The notes below the pieces were generated by a model that ran no database searches, was not told where the DNA came from, and saw nothing but the letters and a program-made list of their open reading frames with translations. From Bugula neritina (taxonomy: Eukaryota; Animalia; Bryozoa): a stretch of DNA of 64,000 bases. The stretch is from assembly GCA_964035545.1 (NCBI GenBank), contig OZ037769.1:62001-126000 (forward strand), given 5' to 3'. Of this stretch, positions 28,692 through 36,800 are shown piece after piece. The position numbers and the translations under genes are program-made. The stretch's first letter is position 1; each line of letters starts with the position of its first letter.

Positions 28692-31600
28692 ATGTTAGAA
28701 AGGCTTTGGACTAGATGTCGTGTTATTGTCTCAAGACATCACTGTAACTCTTCCTCAAACCACCCCTTTTCAAGGCTGTCTAAACCCCCTCACCTCCTTG
28801 CCCTCAGTCATCTCAACAGAACTGCTGTTGAGGATGGTTTTGGAAAACATACTTATGGCTCCTTGCTTTTCCAAAGTTATCAACTTGCCCATCACATGAA
28901 ACAGTCACTTGGTTGGTTCATAAAACTTACACCAATACTACCTTCTCTATACTGTGGTACTACCTTCTCTATACTGTGGTACTACCTTCTCTATACTGTG
29001 GTACTACTTTCTCTATACTGTGTATACTATACTGTGTATTACTATACTGTGTATACTCCACCATATACTATGCTGTGACATATTGTCAATAGGGTGCAGC
29101 AGCCTGAAGGGGGAGCGGGTTGTATACTTAACACCAAACGACTCAAGCAATGTTGTTACTCTCTGGGCCATATGGATGACAGGAGCTATTGCCGTACCTC
29201 TATGTGCATCACATCCTCTCTCTGAAAAGCAGTACTTTGTGGATGACTCTGAGGCTAAGCTAGTTGTTGGTGAGTATGTAGAGAGAGAGGGGGAGAGAGA
29301 GAGGGGGGGGGGGAGAGAGAGAGAGGGGGTTATTGTACCATTTATATCATTTATATTAATTGTTTGAAGGGAAGTTTATTTTAAATGGAAACTGCTTTCA
29401 CTGTCACGTGTTCAGGAAACTACCATCTCTATATTAAAATAGGAACTGAAAAATATGCGGATGAAATATTGAAGTTGGCGAAAGGTAGATTAACTCCACA
29501 TTTGGTTTTGCCGAATGTAAGTATATATACATTGTGTAAATATATATACATTGTGTAAGTATATATACATTGTGTAAGAATATATACATTGTGTAAGTAT
29601 ATATACATTGTGTAAGTATATATACATTGTGTAAGTATATATACATTGTGTAAGTATATATACATTGTGTAAGTATATATACATTGTGTAAGTATATATA
29701 CATTGTGTAAGAATATATACATTGTGTAAGTATATATACATTGTGTAAGTATATGTGCAATTAGTATATATTATATAGTAGTGTGAGTGATGATGGAACG
29801 TCAGTCTGTGTGTCTGTAGGCTAAAGTTGAATCGGTGAAGAATAGCGACATGCCTTCTGCTTATCAACTCGGAGAAATAGAGAAGACAACTCCAGCTCTT
29901 ATTATATACACCAGCGGCACAACTGGCCGTCCAAAGGTACTATAATATACTCTGTATATTATATACTCTGTATACTCTGTGTACTCTGTATACTCTGTAT
30001 ACTCTGTATACTCTACTCTGTATACTCTGTGTACTCTGTGTACTCTGTATACTCTGTACACTCTGTATACTCTGTGTACTCTGTGTACTCTGTGTATTAT
30101 ATACTCTGTATACTCTGTGTACTCTGTGTACTCTGTATACTCTGTGTACTCGTATTATATACTCTCTAATTTACTATATACACTGTATCGCTGTATACTT
30201 TATGCTCTATTCTATACAGAAGGTGTATTCCAGGGTGTGGTTCTGTCACATGGCAATATCGAGGCTACGACACAAGACATGATAAAGGCATGGGAATGGA
30301 CATCAGCTGACACCTGTCTACATGTGCTCCCTCTGCACCACATACACGGTCTAGTCAACGCTCTGCATGTTCCCCTCTCAGCTGCTGCTAAGTGTGTCAT
30401 GCTGCCTCACTTTGATGCCAGAGAGGTGTAGTGTTTACATGGTTACTAGGTGTAGTGTTTCCATGGTTACTAGGTGTAGTGTTTACATGGTTGTTAGGTG
30501 TAGTGTTTCCATGGTTACTAGGTGTAGTGTTTACATGGTTGCTAGGTGTAGTGTTTACATGGTTGCTAGGTGCAGTGTTTACATGGTTGCTAGGTGTAGT
30601 GTTTACATGGTTATTAGGTGCAGTGTTTACATGGTTGCTAGGTGTAGTGTTTACATGGTTACTAGGTGTAGTGTTTACATGGTTACTAGGTGCAGTGTTT
30701 CCATGGTTACTAGGTGTAGTGTTTACATGGTTACTAGGTGCAGTGTTTCCATGGTTACTAGGTGCAGTGTTTCCATGGTTACTAGGTGTGGAACAAACTC
30801 ATGGCCCCCGACAATCAGGTATCGGTCTTTACTGCTGTACCCACAGTCTACGCTAAACTCCTGGATTATTATGAAACCAACTCAGACTCTAATCTAAACC
30901 CGGAAACCATCAGGCAGGCTTTCAAACGAGTAAGGTGAGCTTTTCATAGCTAATGAATAAGGTGTGTAGATACGTACGTATAGTATATACATGTTGTGTA
31001 TAGATATGTACGTATAGTATACATATACTGTGTGTAGATACGTACGTATAGTATACACATGTTGTGTGTAGATTACTCATGTGCGCTGGTAGTCCATTGC
31101 ATACAACAGTAGCTAAGCTGTGGGTCAAGGTCACAGGTAGTATACTCAAAGACAGATATGGTATGACTGAGTTACTCACAATCATATCCAATCCCCTGCA
31201 TGGACGTCGCAAACCAGGTTTGTGACAGTCAGTCCGTTTCTCTAGAATTACCAGAGTTGTGCTCTCTTCCGACATCCACTGGCAACACTAACATGATGCA
31301 TTAAGTTTTCACCGCACAGTGATAGTAACTAGAATCAGTAAAATCATCAAAGTGATAGTGACTAGAATCAGTAAAATCATTACAGTGATAGTGACTAGAA
31401 TCAGTAAAATCATCACAGTGACGGTAACTAGAATCAGTAAATTAATCACAGTGATTTAAATGTTGAAGATTGATGGTGAGTGGTTCGAATGCGCTGCCAC
31501 TGCCGGTCAGATCAATGTTCAACGAGCTCACTGGCCACGAGTTACTTGAGAGGTACGGTATGACTGAAATACTAATGGCCTTGACACACCCTCTTAGAGG

Positions 31601-33700
31601 AAACCGCTTACCAGGTACAGGGGTCCTTGCTACACTCCTAGTCAGTAAGGGGTACTCACTACACTCGTATCCAGTAAGGGGTCCTTACTACACTCCTGTC
31701 CAGTAAGGGGTCCTTACTACACTCCTATCCAGTAAGGGGTACTCACTACACTCCTAGTCAGTAAGGGGTACTCACTACACTCCTAGTCAGTAAGGGGTAC
31801 TCACTACACTCTTATTCAGTAAGGGGTACTTATTACACTCCTAGTCAGTAAGGGGTACTCACTACACTCCTATCCAGTAAGGGGTACTTACTACACTCCT
31901 AGCTACAGTAGCTTAGCCTTAGCTCTTACTGCTTTCATATCACCATAAAGCTACTGAATTTAACAAACTAACTGGCTAATCTTATTCAGGAGAATCGCAA
32001 GAAAAGAAAGTTATGTTGTGAGTGGAAAGGCAATTTTAAGGGTAGAGAGTGCAACTCCAAATTTATACGTCAGTGTCCATTTTGAATAATTTTCACATCA
32101 ATGCACTGGTTATTCATACATTTTACTCTACTATTTACTCTTGTTATTCGAATAAGTTAAACAGATGTTATTGTGATGTACATGCAGGCACTGTGGGGTT
32201 TCCATTCAATTCTGTGAAGACAATGATAGCTAAAGCTGATGCTACTGCGCCACATGGCTATGTGGATGTAACCAATGAGATGGCAGATGACAATTCAGGT
32301 GTATATACATTTATACAGTAGGCCTATATGCTATCTAGTATAGTGTTGGCACTGAATCGCCTAAGATTCCAAATGATAGGAAGTCTCCATCTTAGATATG
32401 GTAAAGGTATATTCATGTACATAGGTGAGAGTAGAGAGGGGGAGCTATATGTGAAGGGCCCTACTGTGTTTGAGAAATACTGGAACAAACCTGAGTCTAC
32501 CAGGGAGACCTTTACATCTGATGGCTGGTTCAAAACTGGTGACACGATGTGCATAGACAAGGATGGTTACTATAAAGTGTTGGGTAGAACTTCTGTAGAC
32601 ATTATCAAAAGTAGTGGATACAAAATATCAGCACTAGACGTTGAGAGTAAACTTCTTCAACACAACAACATTTCTGAGTGCGCCATTCTCGGAGTTCCGC
32701 ATTCAGGTAGTTATACTACTACTCACTAGTAACTAGTATATTACTCACTAGTAACTAGTATACTACTCGCTAGTAACTAGTATACTACTCACTAGTAACT
32801 AGTATACTAATCACTAGTAACTAGTATATTACTCACTAGTAACTAGTATACTACTCACTAGTAACTAGTATACTACTCACTAGTAACTAGTATACTACTC
32901 GCTAGTAACTAGTATACTACTCACTAGTAACTAGTATACTAATCACTAGTAACTAGTATATTACTCACTAGTAACTAGTATACTAATCACTAGTAACTAG
33001 TATATTACTCACTAGTAACTAGTATACTACTCGCTAGTAACTAGTATACTACTCACTAGTAACTAGTATACTAATCACTAGTAACTAGTATATTACTCAC
33101 TAGTAACTAGTATACTACTCACTAGTAACTAGTATACTACTCACTAGTAACTAGTATACTACTCGCTAGTAACTAGTATACTACTCGCTAGTAACTAGTA
33201 TACTACTCGCTAGTAACTAGTATACTACTCGCTAGTAACTAGTATACTACTCACTAGTAACTAGTATACTACTCGCTAGTAACTAGTATACTACTCGCTA
33301 GTAACTAGTATACTACTCGCTAGTAACTAGTATACTACTCGCTAGTAACTAGTATACTACTCACTAGTAACTAGTATACTACTCGCTAGTAACTAGTATA
33401 CTACTCGCTAGTAACTAGTACAATACTCGCTAGTAACTAGTATATTACTCACTAGTAACTAGTACACTATATTGTTTATTAACTTTAGTGTATGGACAAC
33501 AGATAACTGCGCTGTTGGTGTGTAAACTGGGGACGCAACTGGACATTGACTCTCTAAGGACATGGTGCCGAGACTGCATGCCTCCTTACACCATACCCAG
33601 AGAGTTCAAGATCTTAGGCAGCATACCGCGCAATGCCATGGGCAAGGTCAACAAGAAAGCTCTGATACAGCAGTACTATCCAGAAAGTTTGAATGTGTAA
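28692..33700 (+). CDS. ACSF3: Mitochondrial malonate-CoA ligase / acyl-CoA synthetase family member 3, with duplicated exon 7
   Basis: Exons 28692-28911, 29093-29269, 29443-29516, 29820-29936, 30234-30425, 30786-30934, [31072-31217 or 31469-31614], 32188-32298, 32425-32706 and 33489-33700. Motifs [60 protein letters not shown] and [11 protein letters not shown] are ACSF3-type. Confidence 0.94.
29517..29755 (+). repeat. Intronic minisatellite, 19-nt unit GTAAGTATATATACATTGT, ~12.5 copies
   Basis: The first copy is the real donor of ACSF3 intron 3. Confidence 0.95.
29945..30170 (+). repeat. Intronic 9-nt array (tactctgtr)
   Basis: ACSF3 intron 4. Confidence 0.92.
30426..30785 (+). repeat. Entire ACSF3 intron 5 = 15 x 24-nt unit GTGTAGTGTTTACATGGTTACTAG
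   Basis: 360 nt, exactly 15 units. Exon GAG|GTG... on the left and ...TAG|GTGTGG exon on the right. Confidence 0.96.
31615..31902 (+). repeat. Intronic minisatellite, 29-nt unit (gtaaggggtactcactacactcctagtca), ~10 copies
   Basis: Begins at the donor of ACSF3 exon 7b. Confidence 0.92.
32714..33466. repeat. Intronic minisatellite, 22-nt unit (tactactcrctagtaactagta), ~34 copies
   Basis: Fills the last ACSF3 intron. Confidence 0.96.
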
Positions 33701-33808: not shown

Positions 33809-36800
33809 TCATTGGTTAATTCCATCAACCCAGGGCTGGTTTCTCATGACGTGTGTCTTAGTGTGTTGGCTGAAAAACTCATCCTCATTCACTTTGATAA
33901 TGCTGTGTCTTTCCATGTAAAACCTGTCTTTATCCATTGTTAGGTTAAACTCAGCTTTTATCTTAGCTCTTATGTCTGGTTCTCTTGACCTTTTAGCAAA
34001 GTAATACAATAATACGATAATGCAATAGTACAGTAATACAATAATACAGTAATACAATAATACTGTAGTACAATAATGCAATAATAAAATAATACTGTAA
34101 TACAATACAGTGATACAGTACATAATACCAGTTACTATTAGACTACTAGTTACTACTAGTTACTATTAGACTACTAGTTACTACCAGTTACTATTAGACT
34201 ACTAGTTACTATTAGACTACTAGTTACTACCAGTTACTATTAGACTACTAGTTACTATTAAACTACTAGTTATTATTAGACTACTAGTTACTACTAGTTA
34301 CTATTAGACTACTAGTTACTATTAGTTACTACTAGTTACTGTTAGACTACTAGTTACTACTGTATGTTAAGTTCTGCTCACCAGCTGAGTTCATGTTTGA
34401 CATTCTGTGTGGCAGAAGCAGGGTCTGCTGGGTTCATACTCATATTCTCTTCTGTTCTCCACTCCGTGACAAGACTGTGGGCCAGAAATTCCTTTTCTCC
34501 TGAGTATGATTTGATCTGCAACTCGTGACAACCAGTCTCATTAATACTCGCACTCTCTGAATAGCTGCTAGCTTTTCTCATCACGTATTCCAGTGGTTTG
34601 CATTCGGTTATTGCTGGAATTACATCTGTGAAAGGCTCACTAGACACAAGAGTTGGCATCTCCACCTGCAATTTATTTACCTCTATTTGAAAGTTTACTG
34701 GTTCCGGGTTCGGAATAAATGTTGGGAAATAGTTTCCTGCTATGGCTAGCCTGAGCTTACTGCCAACCGATATTTTCTCACCAATATAATCAAACTTAGC
34801 TGCAACAGTTTTAAAAACCCCACTCTTCAGCCGTTCCATATGTTCCCCAGTCTCATCTAAGTTGAGATTACAGGCAGTGGAGGAGATGAGTCGCGACTGA
34901 TTGGATGAATTGACAACGCATAACCTGAGAAATATATTAGCGTAAATCTTATCACTTGAAACAGAGAGCGTAACAACAGGTCGTCCTAAGAACTCGGTCT
35001 CCTCAGTGAAGTCATCCGTGTCAAACAGAACGCTGCGCCGGTCATCTGGGCTCTGCTCCATTGGCAAACCATTCTTTCCAACGAAGAAGAATGCAGCCAA
35101 TTGGTGCCAGCATGTATCCGTGTTGAACGAGATGACTCCCTCTTCACTTCCCCCATCTCCTTCCTGCATGACTCTCAACTTTCTATTTGCACCCACCACA
35201 AACCTCTTCATGATGGAGGAGGGGTTTTGAATCCACTTCCCTTCAACGTGCTCCGGGAAAGGTACGGGCACATTTTCTTGCACGTAGGTTACCAACCTTG
35301 GTGGCTCTGGCAGTTGCAACCCTTTCAGATGTTTATCAAACCACTTGACAGCTTCTGTGCAAAACCCCCACCTGGGTTCGGGTACTGCAATGTGAGGGTA
35401 CAAATGAACCCATGGCCCAATTATCGCTCTCGTTGGACAGTTAAGCTTGTCCAAAGTTCTTTCAACGGTGTTTGTATAGCCGTCTGCATATCCACAAATC
35501 AGAAAAGTGGCTGCTTTTATTCTAGAGTAGTCTTGACAAACAGAAGCATGTTTCCAGTAAGAATCTTTGGTAGGGTGAGACATCCAAGTCTTGGCAAATG
35601 TTGGAATAGCATCTAATCGCCTCTTCCATTTCTCCCTCCAACATGGAGAAAACATCGGATCTGGAGGTAGACTCATAATGGCATCCATATAGGCTGCCCA
35701 GCTGGTGTTTCCCATAAGCATCACACCACCTATGTCATTAAACAAATAAGTAAACACTAATAAAGGAGGAAAGATGAGAAGACATAATATGACTGGACTG
35801 TTAGTTGTAGTAACTTTCCCCACCTTTGTAGTGGATATCATCTTGGAACCTGTCATCACTGAATGATATGCTTATTACAGCCTTGAGTGCTGGTGGTTGG
35901 CATGCAGCTACCTTCAAATACAACATCAACAGAGAAGACTTTAGCTCCAACATACACTCTGCTCATCACTCCTTCTCTCTAAATGTTTGCTCCTTAGAAA
36001 ATTATATTCCTACCAAGTCTAGTGTTATTACCTGCAGGGAGTTGAACCCTCCCCAAGAGATGCCCATCATTCCCACACTCCCTGAGCACCAGGGCTGCCT
36101 GCTGATCCAGTCAATCACCTGCACAGCATCTACTTGCTCTTGCTCCACATACTCGTCCTGAGGCAGTCCTGTCGAGTCGCCACACCCTCTCATGTCCACT
36201 CTCACTCCCACATAACCATTCAGAGCCAGGTGTTGGTGAGTAATCTCATCCCTGAAAGTTGTCTTATCTCTTTTCCTGTATGGAAGGAATTCCAGCACTG
36301 CAGGCACCGGTTTCTCGGCAACATCTCTAGGCATCCATAGTCGAGCCGACAACTCTACCCCATCATTCAGTGGAATGAAAATATTTTCCTCTATCTTTAT
36401 AATTTCCTTCAAATTACACACCAGATTAACTTTCTACTGTATAGTAACATACACTGCACACTATCTAGTTCTACTAGTTATTAAATACTAGAAGTAGAAT
36501 ACTAGATAATGTTTACTAGTTATACTTATTAGTGCCTTCTAGCTACTATCTAGTTCTACTAGTTATTATAGTGTCTACTAGTTAGTAGTTAGCTAGTATA
36601 CCATCTACTACTAGTACTAGTAGTAGTAGTTAGATAGCACAATATCTAATAGATTCAGATTGGTTAGTTAGAGTGCACCTGCTAGCTGAGAGATTTGCTG
36701 CTATCACTATGTAAGTACCATAAGCACTAGCTTACGATGACAATATTAATGATAGTGCAAGAAGGCATACATATCTGATACCATTTCAATGTTAGGAAGC

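What the first reader, a model, noticed from the sequence alone, without database searches (positions are those of the whole stretch)
31072..31614. Mutually exclusive duplicated exon pair rewriting the ACSF3 active-site segment
Seen: two 146-nt exons with identical phases (2 to 1), both open and flanked by AG/GT. Exon 7a (31072-31217) encodes [48 protein letters not shown]. Exon 7b (31469-31614) encodes [48 protein letters not shown]. Including both or neither shifts frame. Established: this segment carries the SGSA loop and the A5 YGMTE motif of ANL adenylating enzymes, which line the adenine and acyl pockets, and 7b resembles canonical ACSF3/MatB. Inference: 7a is highly diverged yet keeps length and RYGMTE, so it is under selection and gives a second acyl-CoA synthetase with altered substrate specificity from one gene.
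Basis: partly seen in the sequence, partly recalled or inferred. Interest (0 to 1): 0.85.

Follow-up and report, generated by a model that had tools for sequence, protein, structure and literature searches.

The report
Two swappable pockets in bryozoan ACSF3
The single gene for the malonate-activating enzyme ACSF3 in a moss animal (bryozoan) carries two old copies of the exon that forms its substrate pocket, both used in RNA, and the unusual copy changes residues known to set substrate choice in bacterial relatives, so one gene probably makes two enzymes with different diets.

Summary
Observation confirmed. The window holds the genome's only ACSF3-type gene, with two 146-nt, same-phase, open copies of exon 7. 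RNA contigs from four studies of a sister lineage show 7a spliced to exon 6 in all four. Contig break points fit 7a-only transcripts in all four runs, 7b-only in two, both-included in three and neither in none. The both-included form stops one codon after 7a, so exclusivity holds for the protein but is leaky in splicing. The pair is intact in three other lineages (7a in a fourth); synonymous sites are at or near saturation, 7a copies form one clade (99/93), and three outgroup animals have one canonical exon. 7b keeps the MatB pocket. 7a keeps Arg299 but has Ser277>Gly (4 of 5 copies), Gly276>Ala/Ser, Leu297>Lys/Met and Met307>Thr (5 of 5); Met307 is the site engineers mutate to widen MatB's substrate range. 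Best reading: a malonate enzyme plus an enzyme for a bulkier or longer dicarboxylate; no assay exists. Precedent: ACSL1/6 gate exons. The scan reported similar exon pairs in other genes of this genome, not in ACSF3.

The parts
28692..28911 (+). Exon 1 (ATG; Arg/Ser/His-rich N-terminus that looks like a mitochondrial presequence). Boundaries inferred.
   Evidence: presequence by eye only
29093..29269 (+). Exon 2
29416..29516 (+). Exon 3; boundaries ambiguous (start 29416 or 29443, end 29504 or 29516); full protein 555-568 aa
29820..29936 (+). Exon 4, carries the P-loop (A3) motif
30234..30425 (+). Exon 5, shared; carries the His209 equivalent of MatB
30786..30934 (+). Exon 6, shared upstream exon
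31072..31217 (+). Exon 7a, derived pocket: Ala5 Gly6 Lys26 Arg28 Thr36 (MatB 276, 277, 297, 299, 307)
31218..31468 (+). Intron between the copies (251 nt; 299, 306 and 44 nt in the other lineages); appears retained in the RNA contigs
31254..31260 (+). Candidate intronic splicing element GAGTTGT, followed by pyrimidines, 21-53 nt after 7a in three deep lineages
   Evidence: 15 of 2000 shuffles; found post hoc, five regions tested; absent from L016
31469..31614 (+). Exon 7b, canonical pocket: Gly5 Ser6 Leu26 Arg28 Met36
31471..31473 (+). TGA read as a stop when 7a is joined to 7b
32188..32298 (+). Exon 8, shared downstream exon
32425..32706 (+). Exon 9
33489..33700 (+). Exon 10, ends with the natural stop

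Best explanation
The ancestral 146-nt exon 7 of ACSF3 was duplicated in tandem in an ancestor of this animal group (probably cheilostome or wider bryozoans). Both copies were kept. Splicing picks 7a or 7b, and because 146 is not a multiple of three only single-copy transcripts give full-length enzyme; joined transcripts stop at once and are waste or a way to turn output down (shown: junctions and frame; inferred: decay). 7b gives an ordinary malonate/methylmalonate-CoA synthetase (inferred from the intact His209/Ser277/Arg299/Met307 set). 7a gives an active adenylating enzyme that still holds a distal carboxylate through Arg299 and His209 but has a roomier, less hydrogen-bonded pocket (Ser277>Gly, Gly276>Ala, Met307>Thr), and so most likely prefers a C2-substituted malonate or a slightly longer dicarboxylate and is poorer on malonate (inferred, not assayed).
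For: Expression: exon 6>7a junction in four studies; unique junction sets from contig ends give 7a>exon 8 in all four, exon 6>7b in X1 and X7, no exon 6>exon 8. Conservation: intact, same-order pair in L020, L015/L017-19 and L016, and 7a in L023; pS 0.55-0.85 against pN 0.26-0.38 for 7a between deep lineages, about the same as 7b (pN 0.28-0.31). 7a copies form one clade, 99/93. Single canonical exon in Owenia (L035), L034 and L036. Pocket: positions 5, 6, 26, 36 are G, S, L, M in 39, 39, 41, 40 of 41 single-copy relatives and in all 7b copies, but A/S, G/S, K/M, T in 7a. Ser277 and Arg299 contact the methylmalonyl group and are 100% conserved in the MatB group; the family-wide residue at 277 is Gly (PMC6122825). 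M306I/V in R. trifolii MatB widens the C2 pocket (bioRxiv 2021.04.06.438652); 306 maps to 307 of 4FUQ by the T207/T208 offset (my inference).
Against: No activity data. Two of the five junctions (exon 6>7b, 7a>exon 8) are deduced from contig ends, not read directly. RNA comes from a sister lineage (alleles match L020), not the sequenced animal. Between the two sister lineages 7a has 4 amino-acid and 2 silent changes, against 5 and 25 in four other exons (Fisher p = 0.024), so constraint on 7a is looser there, though the changes lie at positions 18-20 (end of a helix) and 45, not in the pocket. L023 7a keeps Ser at position 6. Contig depth cannot rank isoforms.
Confidence: 0.6

Rival explanations
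1. Both isoforms are malonate/methylmalonate-CoA synthetases; 7a only retunes kinetics (Km for malonate or ATP, temperature or pH optimum, product inhibition) for a tissue or life stage.
For: Arg299, His209 and the YGM(T/S)E motif are kept in all 7a copies; the changed loop also touches adenine; L023 keeps the Ser; human ACSL6 gate isoforms differ in activity on shared substrates.
Against: Four near-invariant pocket positions change together and stay changed across lineages with saturated silent sites; Met307 is a documented specificity switch.
Confidence: 0.22
2. 7a is a regulatory or low-activity exon: its job is to divert transcripts away from the malonate enzyme (as a catalytically weak protein, or through 7a+7b transcripts that stop early), so splicing sets the dose of 7b enzyme.
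For: Both-included RNA survives assembly in three of four runs and the intron between the copies appears retained; the joined form stops at codon 50 in all four lineages; in two runs the exon 6>7b junction is not in the graph.
Against: A pure poison exon need not keep length, frame, the A5 motif and 19 invariant residues across four lineages. The immediate stop follows from the usual Leu/Val-Met codons at the exon start and also occurs at the start of two 7a copies, so it is not special.
Confidence: 0.13
3. 7a is a decaying duplicate with no selected function.
For: Raised amino-acid change between the sister lineages; lower match to family profiles than 7b.
Against: Open frame, 146-nt length and splice sites in five lineages with silent sites at or near saturation; 7a-specific invariant residues; spliced in all four RNA studies.
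Confidence: 0.03

Closest known systems
ACSL6/ACSL1 fatty-acid Gate-domain exons (PMC1543647, PMC2868784)
   Same: A mutually exclusive pair of homologous exons swaps part of the substrate path of an ANL acyl-CoA synthetase, is conserved across species, and gives isoforms with different activity.
   Different: Different gene and different segment (the short gate motif; from my knowledge it corresponds to the exon 5 region here, not to the GS loop and A5 motif). There a no-gate in-frame form exists; here skipping or joining shifts frame. The ACSL copies differ slightly; 7a and 7b are only 35-46% identical.
ACSF3 / MatB malonyl-CoA synthetases (4FUQ, 3NYQ; NCBIfam PRK07514)
   Same: Gene orthology, exon boundaries, His209, Arg299, A5 motif; the 7b form keeps Gly276, Ser277, Leu297, Met307.
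   Different: The 7a form lacks Ser277 (4 of 5 copies) and Met307 (5 of 5). I found no paper describing duplicated alternative exons in ACSF3 in any species.
Engineered MatB T207G/M306I and M306V (bioRxiv 2021.04.06.438652; 2024.10.29.620781)
   Same: Replacement of the pocket Met by a smaller beta-branched residue.
   Different: Natural change is to Thr and comes with loop changes; the T207-equivalent position is Ile and shared by both isoforms.
Frame-shift-guarded mutually exclusive exons (Hatje et al. 2017, PMC5740500)
   Same: Length not divisible by three, joined reads present, protein-level exclusivity; 83 of 377 such human clusters have joined reads.
   Different: One lineage (L016) has only 44 nt between the copies, under the 50-nt steric limit, so the guard may differ between species.
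Ketohexokinase A/C and pyruvate kinase M1/M2 exon pairs (from memory, not checked here)
   Same: Tandem homologous exons change a metabolic enzyme's properties.
   Different: Unrelated folds; vertebrate; biochemically characterised.

Membership tests
Tandem-duplicated mutually exclusive exons (Hatje 2017 criteria) | Neighbouring homologous exons, similar length, same phase, valid splice sites | tested here: met
Tandem-duplicated mutually exclusive exons (Hatje 2017 criteria) | Junction from upstream exon to second copy, bridging the first (exon 6>7b) | tested here: met
   Deduced from contig ends in X1 and X7, the only junction set that fits; not read directly
Tandem-duplicated mutually exclusive exons (Hatje 2017 criteria) | Junction from first copy to downstream exon, bridging the second (7a>exon 8) | tested here: met
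   Deduced from contig ends in all four runs; not read directly
Tandem-duplicated mutually exclusive exons (Hatje 2017 criteria) | No joined reads unless joining shifts frame | tested here: met
   Joined form exists (X4 record 14) and stops one codon after 7a
Strictly exclusive splicing (steric block, U2/U12 mismatch or RNA pairing) | Copies cannot be joined | tested here: not met
   7a>7b junction seen; 251-nt GT-AG intron; no intron pairing above shuffles. L016 with 44 nt may be sterically blocked (not testable)
Frame-shift guard by nonsense-mediated decay | Joined transcript rises when NMD is blocked | not testable with these tools
   Needs UPF1 knockdown or translation block
ACSF3/MatB malonyl-CoA synthetase, 7b isoform | His209, Ser277, Arg299 (and Met307) | tested here: met
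ACSF3/MatB malonyl-CoA synthetase, 7a isoform | Ser277 hydrogen bond to the carboxylate | tested here: not met
   Gly in four of five 7a copies, including the window's
ACSF3/MatB malonyl-CoA synthetase, 7a isoform | Arg299 and His209 | tested here: met
   Arg28 invariant; His in shared exon 5
ACSF3/MatB malonyl-CoA synthetase, either isoform | Measured malonate + CoA + ATP activity | not testable with these tools
   Needs enzyme assay
ANL adenylating enzymes, 7a isoform | P-loop (A3), A5 YGx(T/S)E, A7/A8 and A10 lysine in the full chain | tested here: met
   A5 in 7a; the others lie in shared exons 4, 9, 10

The most novel reading that the evidence does not exclude
The 7a isoform is a new animal acyl-CoA ligase activity for a dicarboxylate other than malonate or methylmalonate (for example ethylmalonate, methylsuccinate or another C2-substituted or C4-C5 diacid), it is the main ACSF3 product in some tissues or stages of bryozoans, and evolution reached it through the same pocket residue that protein engineers use to widen MatB.
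Probability: 0.35. Interest if true: 0.8.

Novelty: new variant of a known kind. Interest (0 to 1): 0.64.

Why it matters
ACSF3 is treated as the one animal enzyme that activates malonate (PMC13228397). A conserved second pocket in the same gene points to an unknown mitochondrial dicarboxylate substrate in these animals. It also offers a natural two-allele experiment on the residues that set MatB/ACSF3 specificity, useful for making unusual polyketide extender units and for reading human ACSF3 variants. The splicing arrangement itself is a known kind; the pocket chemistry is what is new.

Tried and rejected
Pseudo-exon: rejected (five intact 7a copies, spliced in four studies). Assembly artefact or second gene: rejected (one locus in the genome; same layout in independent assemblies). 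Constitutive tandem inclusion: rejected (stop one codon after 7a). Strict exclusivity: rejected for this lineage. Docking-selector RNA pairing: no duplex beyond shuffles in four tests. Stop-restart at the overlapping TGA/ATG in joined transcripts: the overlap follows from ordinary Leu-Met codons, also present in two 7a copies and absent in L016 7b, so not pursued. A link to symbiont bryostatin synthesis: no evidence; the enzyme looks mitochondrial and the pair occurs in other lineages. Word-index protein searches with 7a found nothing or only the query's cluster; the HMMER library search found the orthologues. WD40 hits to 7a are summed weak repeats. Single-sequence fold failed. Two primary papers (Crosby 2012; a guessed id for the ACSF3 paper) were not held.

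Full report
Observation. With either exon alone the frame runs from exon 5 to the natural stop at 33700. With both, translation stops at 31471-31473; with neither, early in exon 8. Both match the same stretch of the AMP-binding domain and of MatB (4FUQ 273-319). The genome (216 Mb, 321 contigs) has no second copy of either exon, and no second ACSF3-grade match to exon 9.

Organism. A JGI contig (L020) with the same locus at about 14% silent divergence has a record name that begins with AY690838, an accession that occurs in the Bugula neritina mitogenome paper. I infer that the window is from the B. neritina complex or a close relative. The other loci are from unnamed metagenome or Logan assemblies; their shared exon layout and a shared Leu at position 35 in both copies suggest other bryozoans, which I could not verify.

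RNA. Four runs from four studies were laid on 30780-32710. They are assembled contigs, labelled RNA by guess, but their joints skip GT-AG introns, and their alleles match L020. Seen directly: exon 6>7a (all four, as joint or loose end), 7b>exon 8 (X2, X4, X7) and 7a>7b (X4, record 14). Short bridging contigs are not listed, so I used where the contigs end. A de Bruijn contig runs past an exon end by the letters its successors share, and starts before an exon by the letters its predecessors share. The exon 8 contig starts five letters early in X2, X4 and X7, which is the suffix shared by 7a and 7b; the exon 6 contig runs three letters late in X1 and X7, the prefix shared by 7a and 7b. Enumerating all junction sets gave one solution for the exon-exon junctions in each run. 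X1: 6>7a, 6>7b, 7a>8, 7b>8, no 7a>7b. X2 and X4: 6>7a, 7a>8, 7a>7b, 7b>8, no 6>7b. X7: all five. Exon 6>exon 8 never. So both single-exon isoforms exist, 7a is used everywhere, the 7b-only form varies between samples, and a joined form with an immediate stop is common enough to survive assembly. Absence from a graph means rare, not absent, and depth cannot rank isoforms. The intron between the copies shows up in contigs of all four runs, whereas the introns after exon 6 and exon 8 do not. Under the criteria of Hatje et al. (PMC5740500) the pair still counts as mutually exclusive, because joined reads are allowed when they shift frame.

Conservation. A HMMER search with 7a found two proteins closer to 7a than to 7b. 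Their contigs and cluster mates and a metagenome scan gave the intact pair, in the same order and phase, in L020, L015/L017-L019 and L016, and 7a alone in L023 (no 7b in the 1.2 kb before the contig ends). Between deep lineages silent sites are at or near saturation (pS 0.55-0.85) while pN is 0.26-0.38 for 7a and 0.28-0.31 for 7b. In a 48-column tree with 41 single-copy relatives the five 7a copies are one clade (99/93) and the four 7b copies another (91/89; few columns, rough supports). Owenia fusiformis and two unnamed animals have one canonical 146-nt exon at the same boundaries, so the exon is ancestral and the duplication is restricted. One caution: between the two sister lineages 7a shows 4 amino-acid and 2 silent changes, against 5 and 25 in 7b and exons 8-10 (p = 0.024). 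The changes are at positions 18-20 and 45. In a model of a single-copy relative (pLDDT 87) the exon spans strand, loop, helix, strand, loop, and 18-20 fall at the helix end, away from the listed pocket residues.

Pocket. Position p of the exon equals residue 271+p of 4FUQ. In 41 single-copy relatives positions 5, 6, 26, 28 and 36 are Gly (39), Ser (39), Leu (41), Arg (41) and Met (40), and all 7b copies agree. The 7a copies have Ala/Ser, Gly (Ser in L023), Lys/Met, Arg and Thr. Ser277 and Arg299 bind the methylmalonyl group in 3NYQ and are fully conserved in that enzyme group, and Gly is the family-wide residue at 277 (PMC6122825). Met306 of R. trifolii MatB is a known specificity switch: Ile or Val there makes room for larger C2 groups. 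It maps to 307 in 4FUQ by the one-residue offset seen at Thr207/208 (my inference). From memory, and not tested here, 276, 299 and 307 also correspond to positions 301, 322 and 330 of the NRPS adenylation specificity code.

Mechanism. Shown: duplication, conservation, use of both exons, frame guard, leaky joining, and the location of the 7a changes. Inferred: decay of the joined form; 7b as the malonate enzyme; 7a as an active enzyme that keeps the carboxylate-binding Arg and His but has a wider pocket, most likely for a substituted malonate or a longer diacid (0.6). Rivals: kinetic tuning on the same substrates (0.22), a mainly regulatory exon (0.13), decay (0.03). A 7-nt word, GAGTTGT, lies 21-53 nt after 7a in three deep lineages (15 of 2000 shuffles, post hoc) and may help choose the exon; it is missing in L016, where only 44 nt separate the copies. 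No long-range intron pairing was found.

Comparison. The nearest precedent is the gate-exon pair of ACSL6 and ACSL1, another ANL enzyme with a different segment swapped. I found no paper on duplicated ACSF3 exons or bryozoan ACSF3. Other notes of this scan report conserved exon pairs in several other genes of this genome (unchecked), so the arrangement is not rare here. As a splicing system this is a new member of a known kind. As an enzyme, 7a fails one defining feature of malonyl-CoA synthetases and is an uncharacterised variant.

Limits. No assay; two junctions deduced; RNA from a sister lineage; related loci unnamed.

Noticed in passing
window 34378-35859, minus strand: A 493-aa uninterrupted ORF with Peptidase_S15 and PepX_C domains (CocE/NonD-like hydrolase) lies tail to tail with ACSF3 and is kept in L020. 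The long intron-free stretch in an intron-rich genome may point to a bacterial origin or retrocopy.
   Followed up: partly
window 30424-30789 and 30962-31073: Introns 5 and 6 are tandem arrays (24-nt x 15; 34-nt x 3.3) whose units repeat the AG acceptor context, yet the RNA contigs use only the last acceptor.
   Followed up: partly
L016 300-343: Only 44 nt separate 7a and 7b in this lineage, under the 50-nt steric limit, so strict exclusivity may have evolved there while it is leaky in the window's lineage.
   Followed up: no
L014 447-923: A close relative has an extra intron inside exon 9, at the same place as Owenia (L035); the window's lineage lacks it, which suggests an intron loss.
   Followed up: no
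window 30780-32710 against runs X1-X7 and L020: All RNA runs filed under the same species label differ from the assembly at about 14% of silent sites and match L020, consistent with cryptic species.
   Followed up: partly
G000 C1 about 19.08-19.29 Mb and 20.44-20.45 Mb; C2 about 3.03-3.05 Mb; C6 about 8.68-8.70 Mb: Clusters of many weak matches to the ANL A7/A8 region suggest tandem expansions of another acyl-CoA ligase family.
   Followed up: no
window 29416-29516: Exon 3 has two possible acceptors and two possible donors that all keep frame.
   Followed up: no
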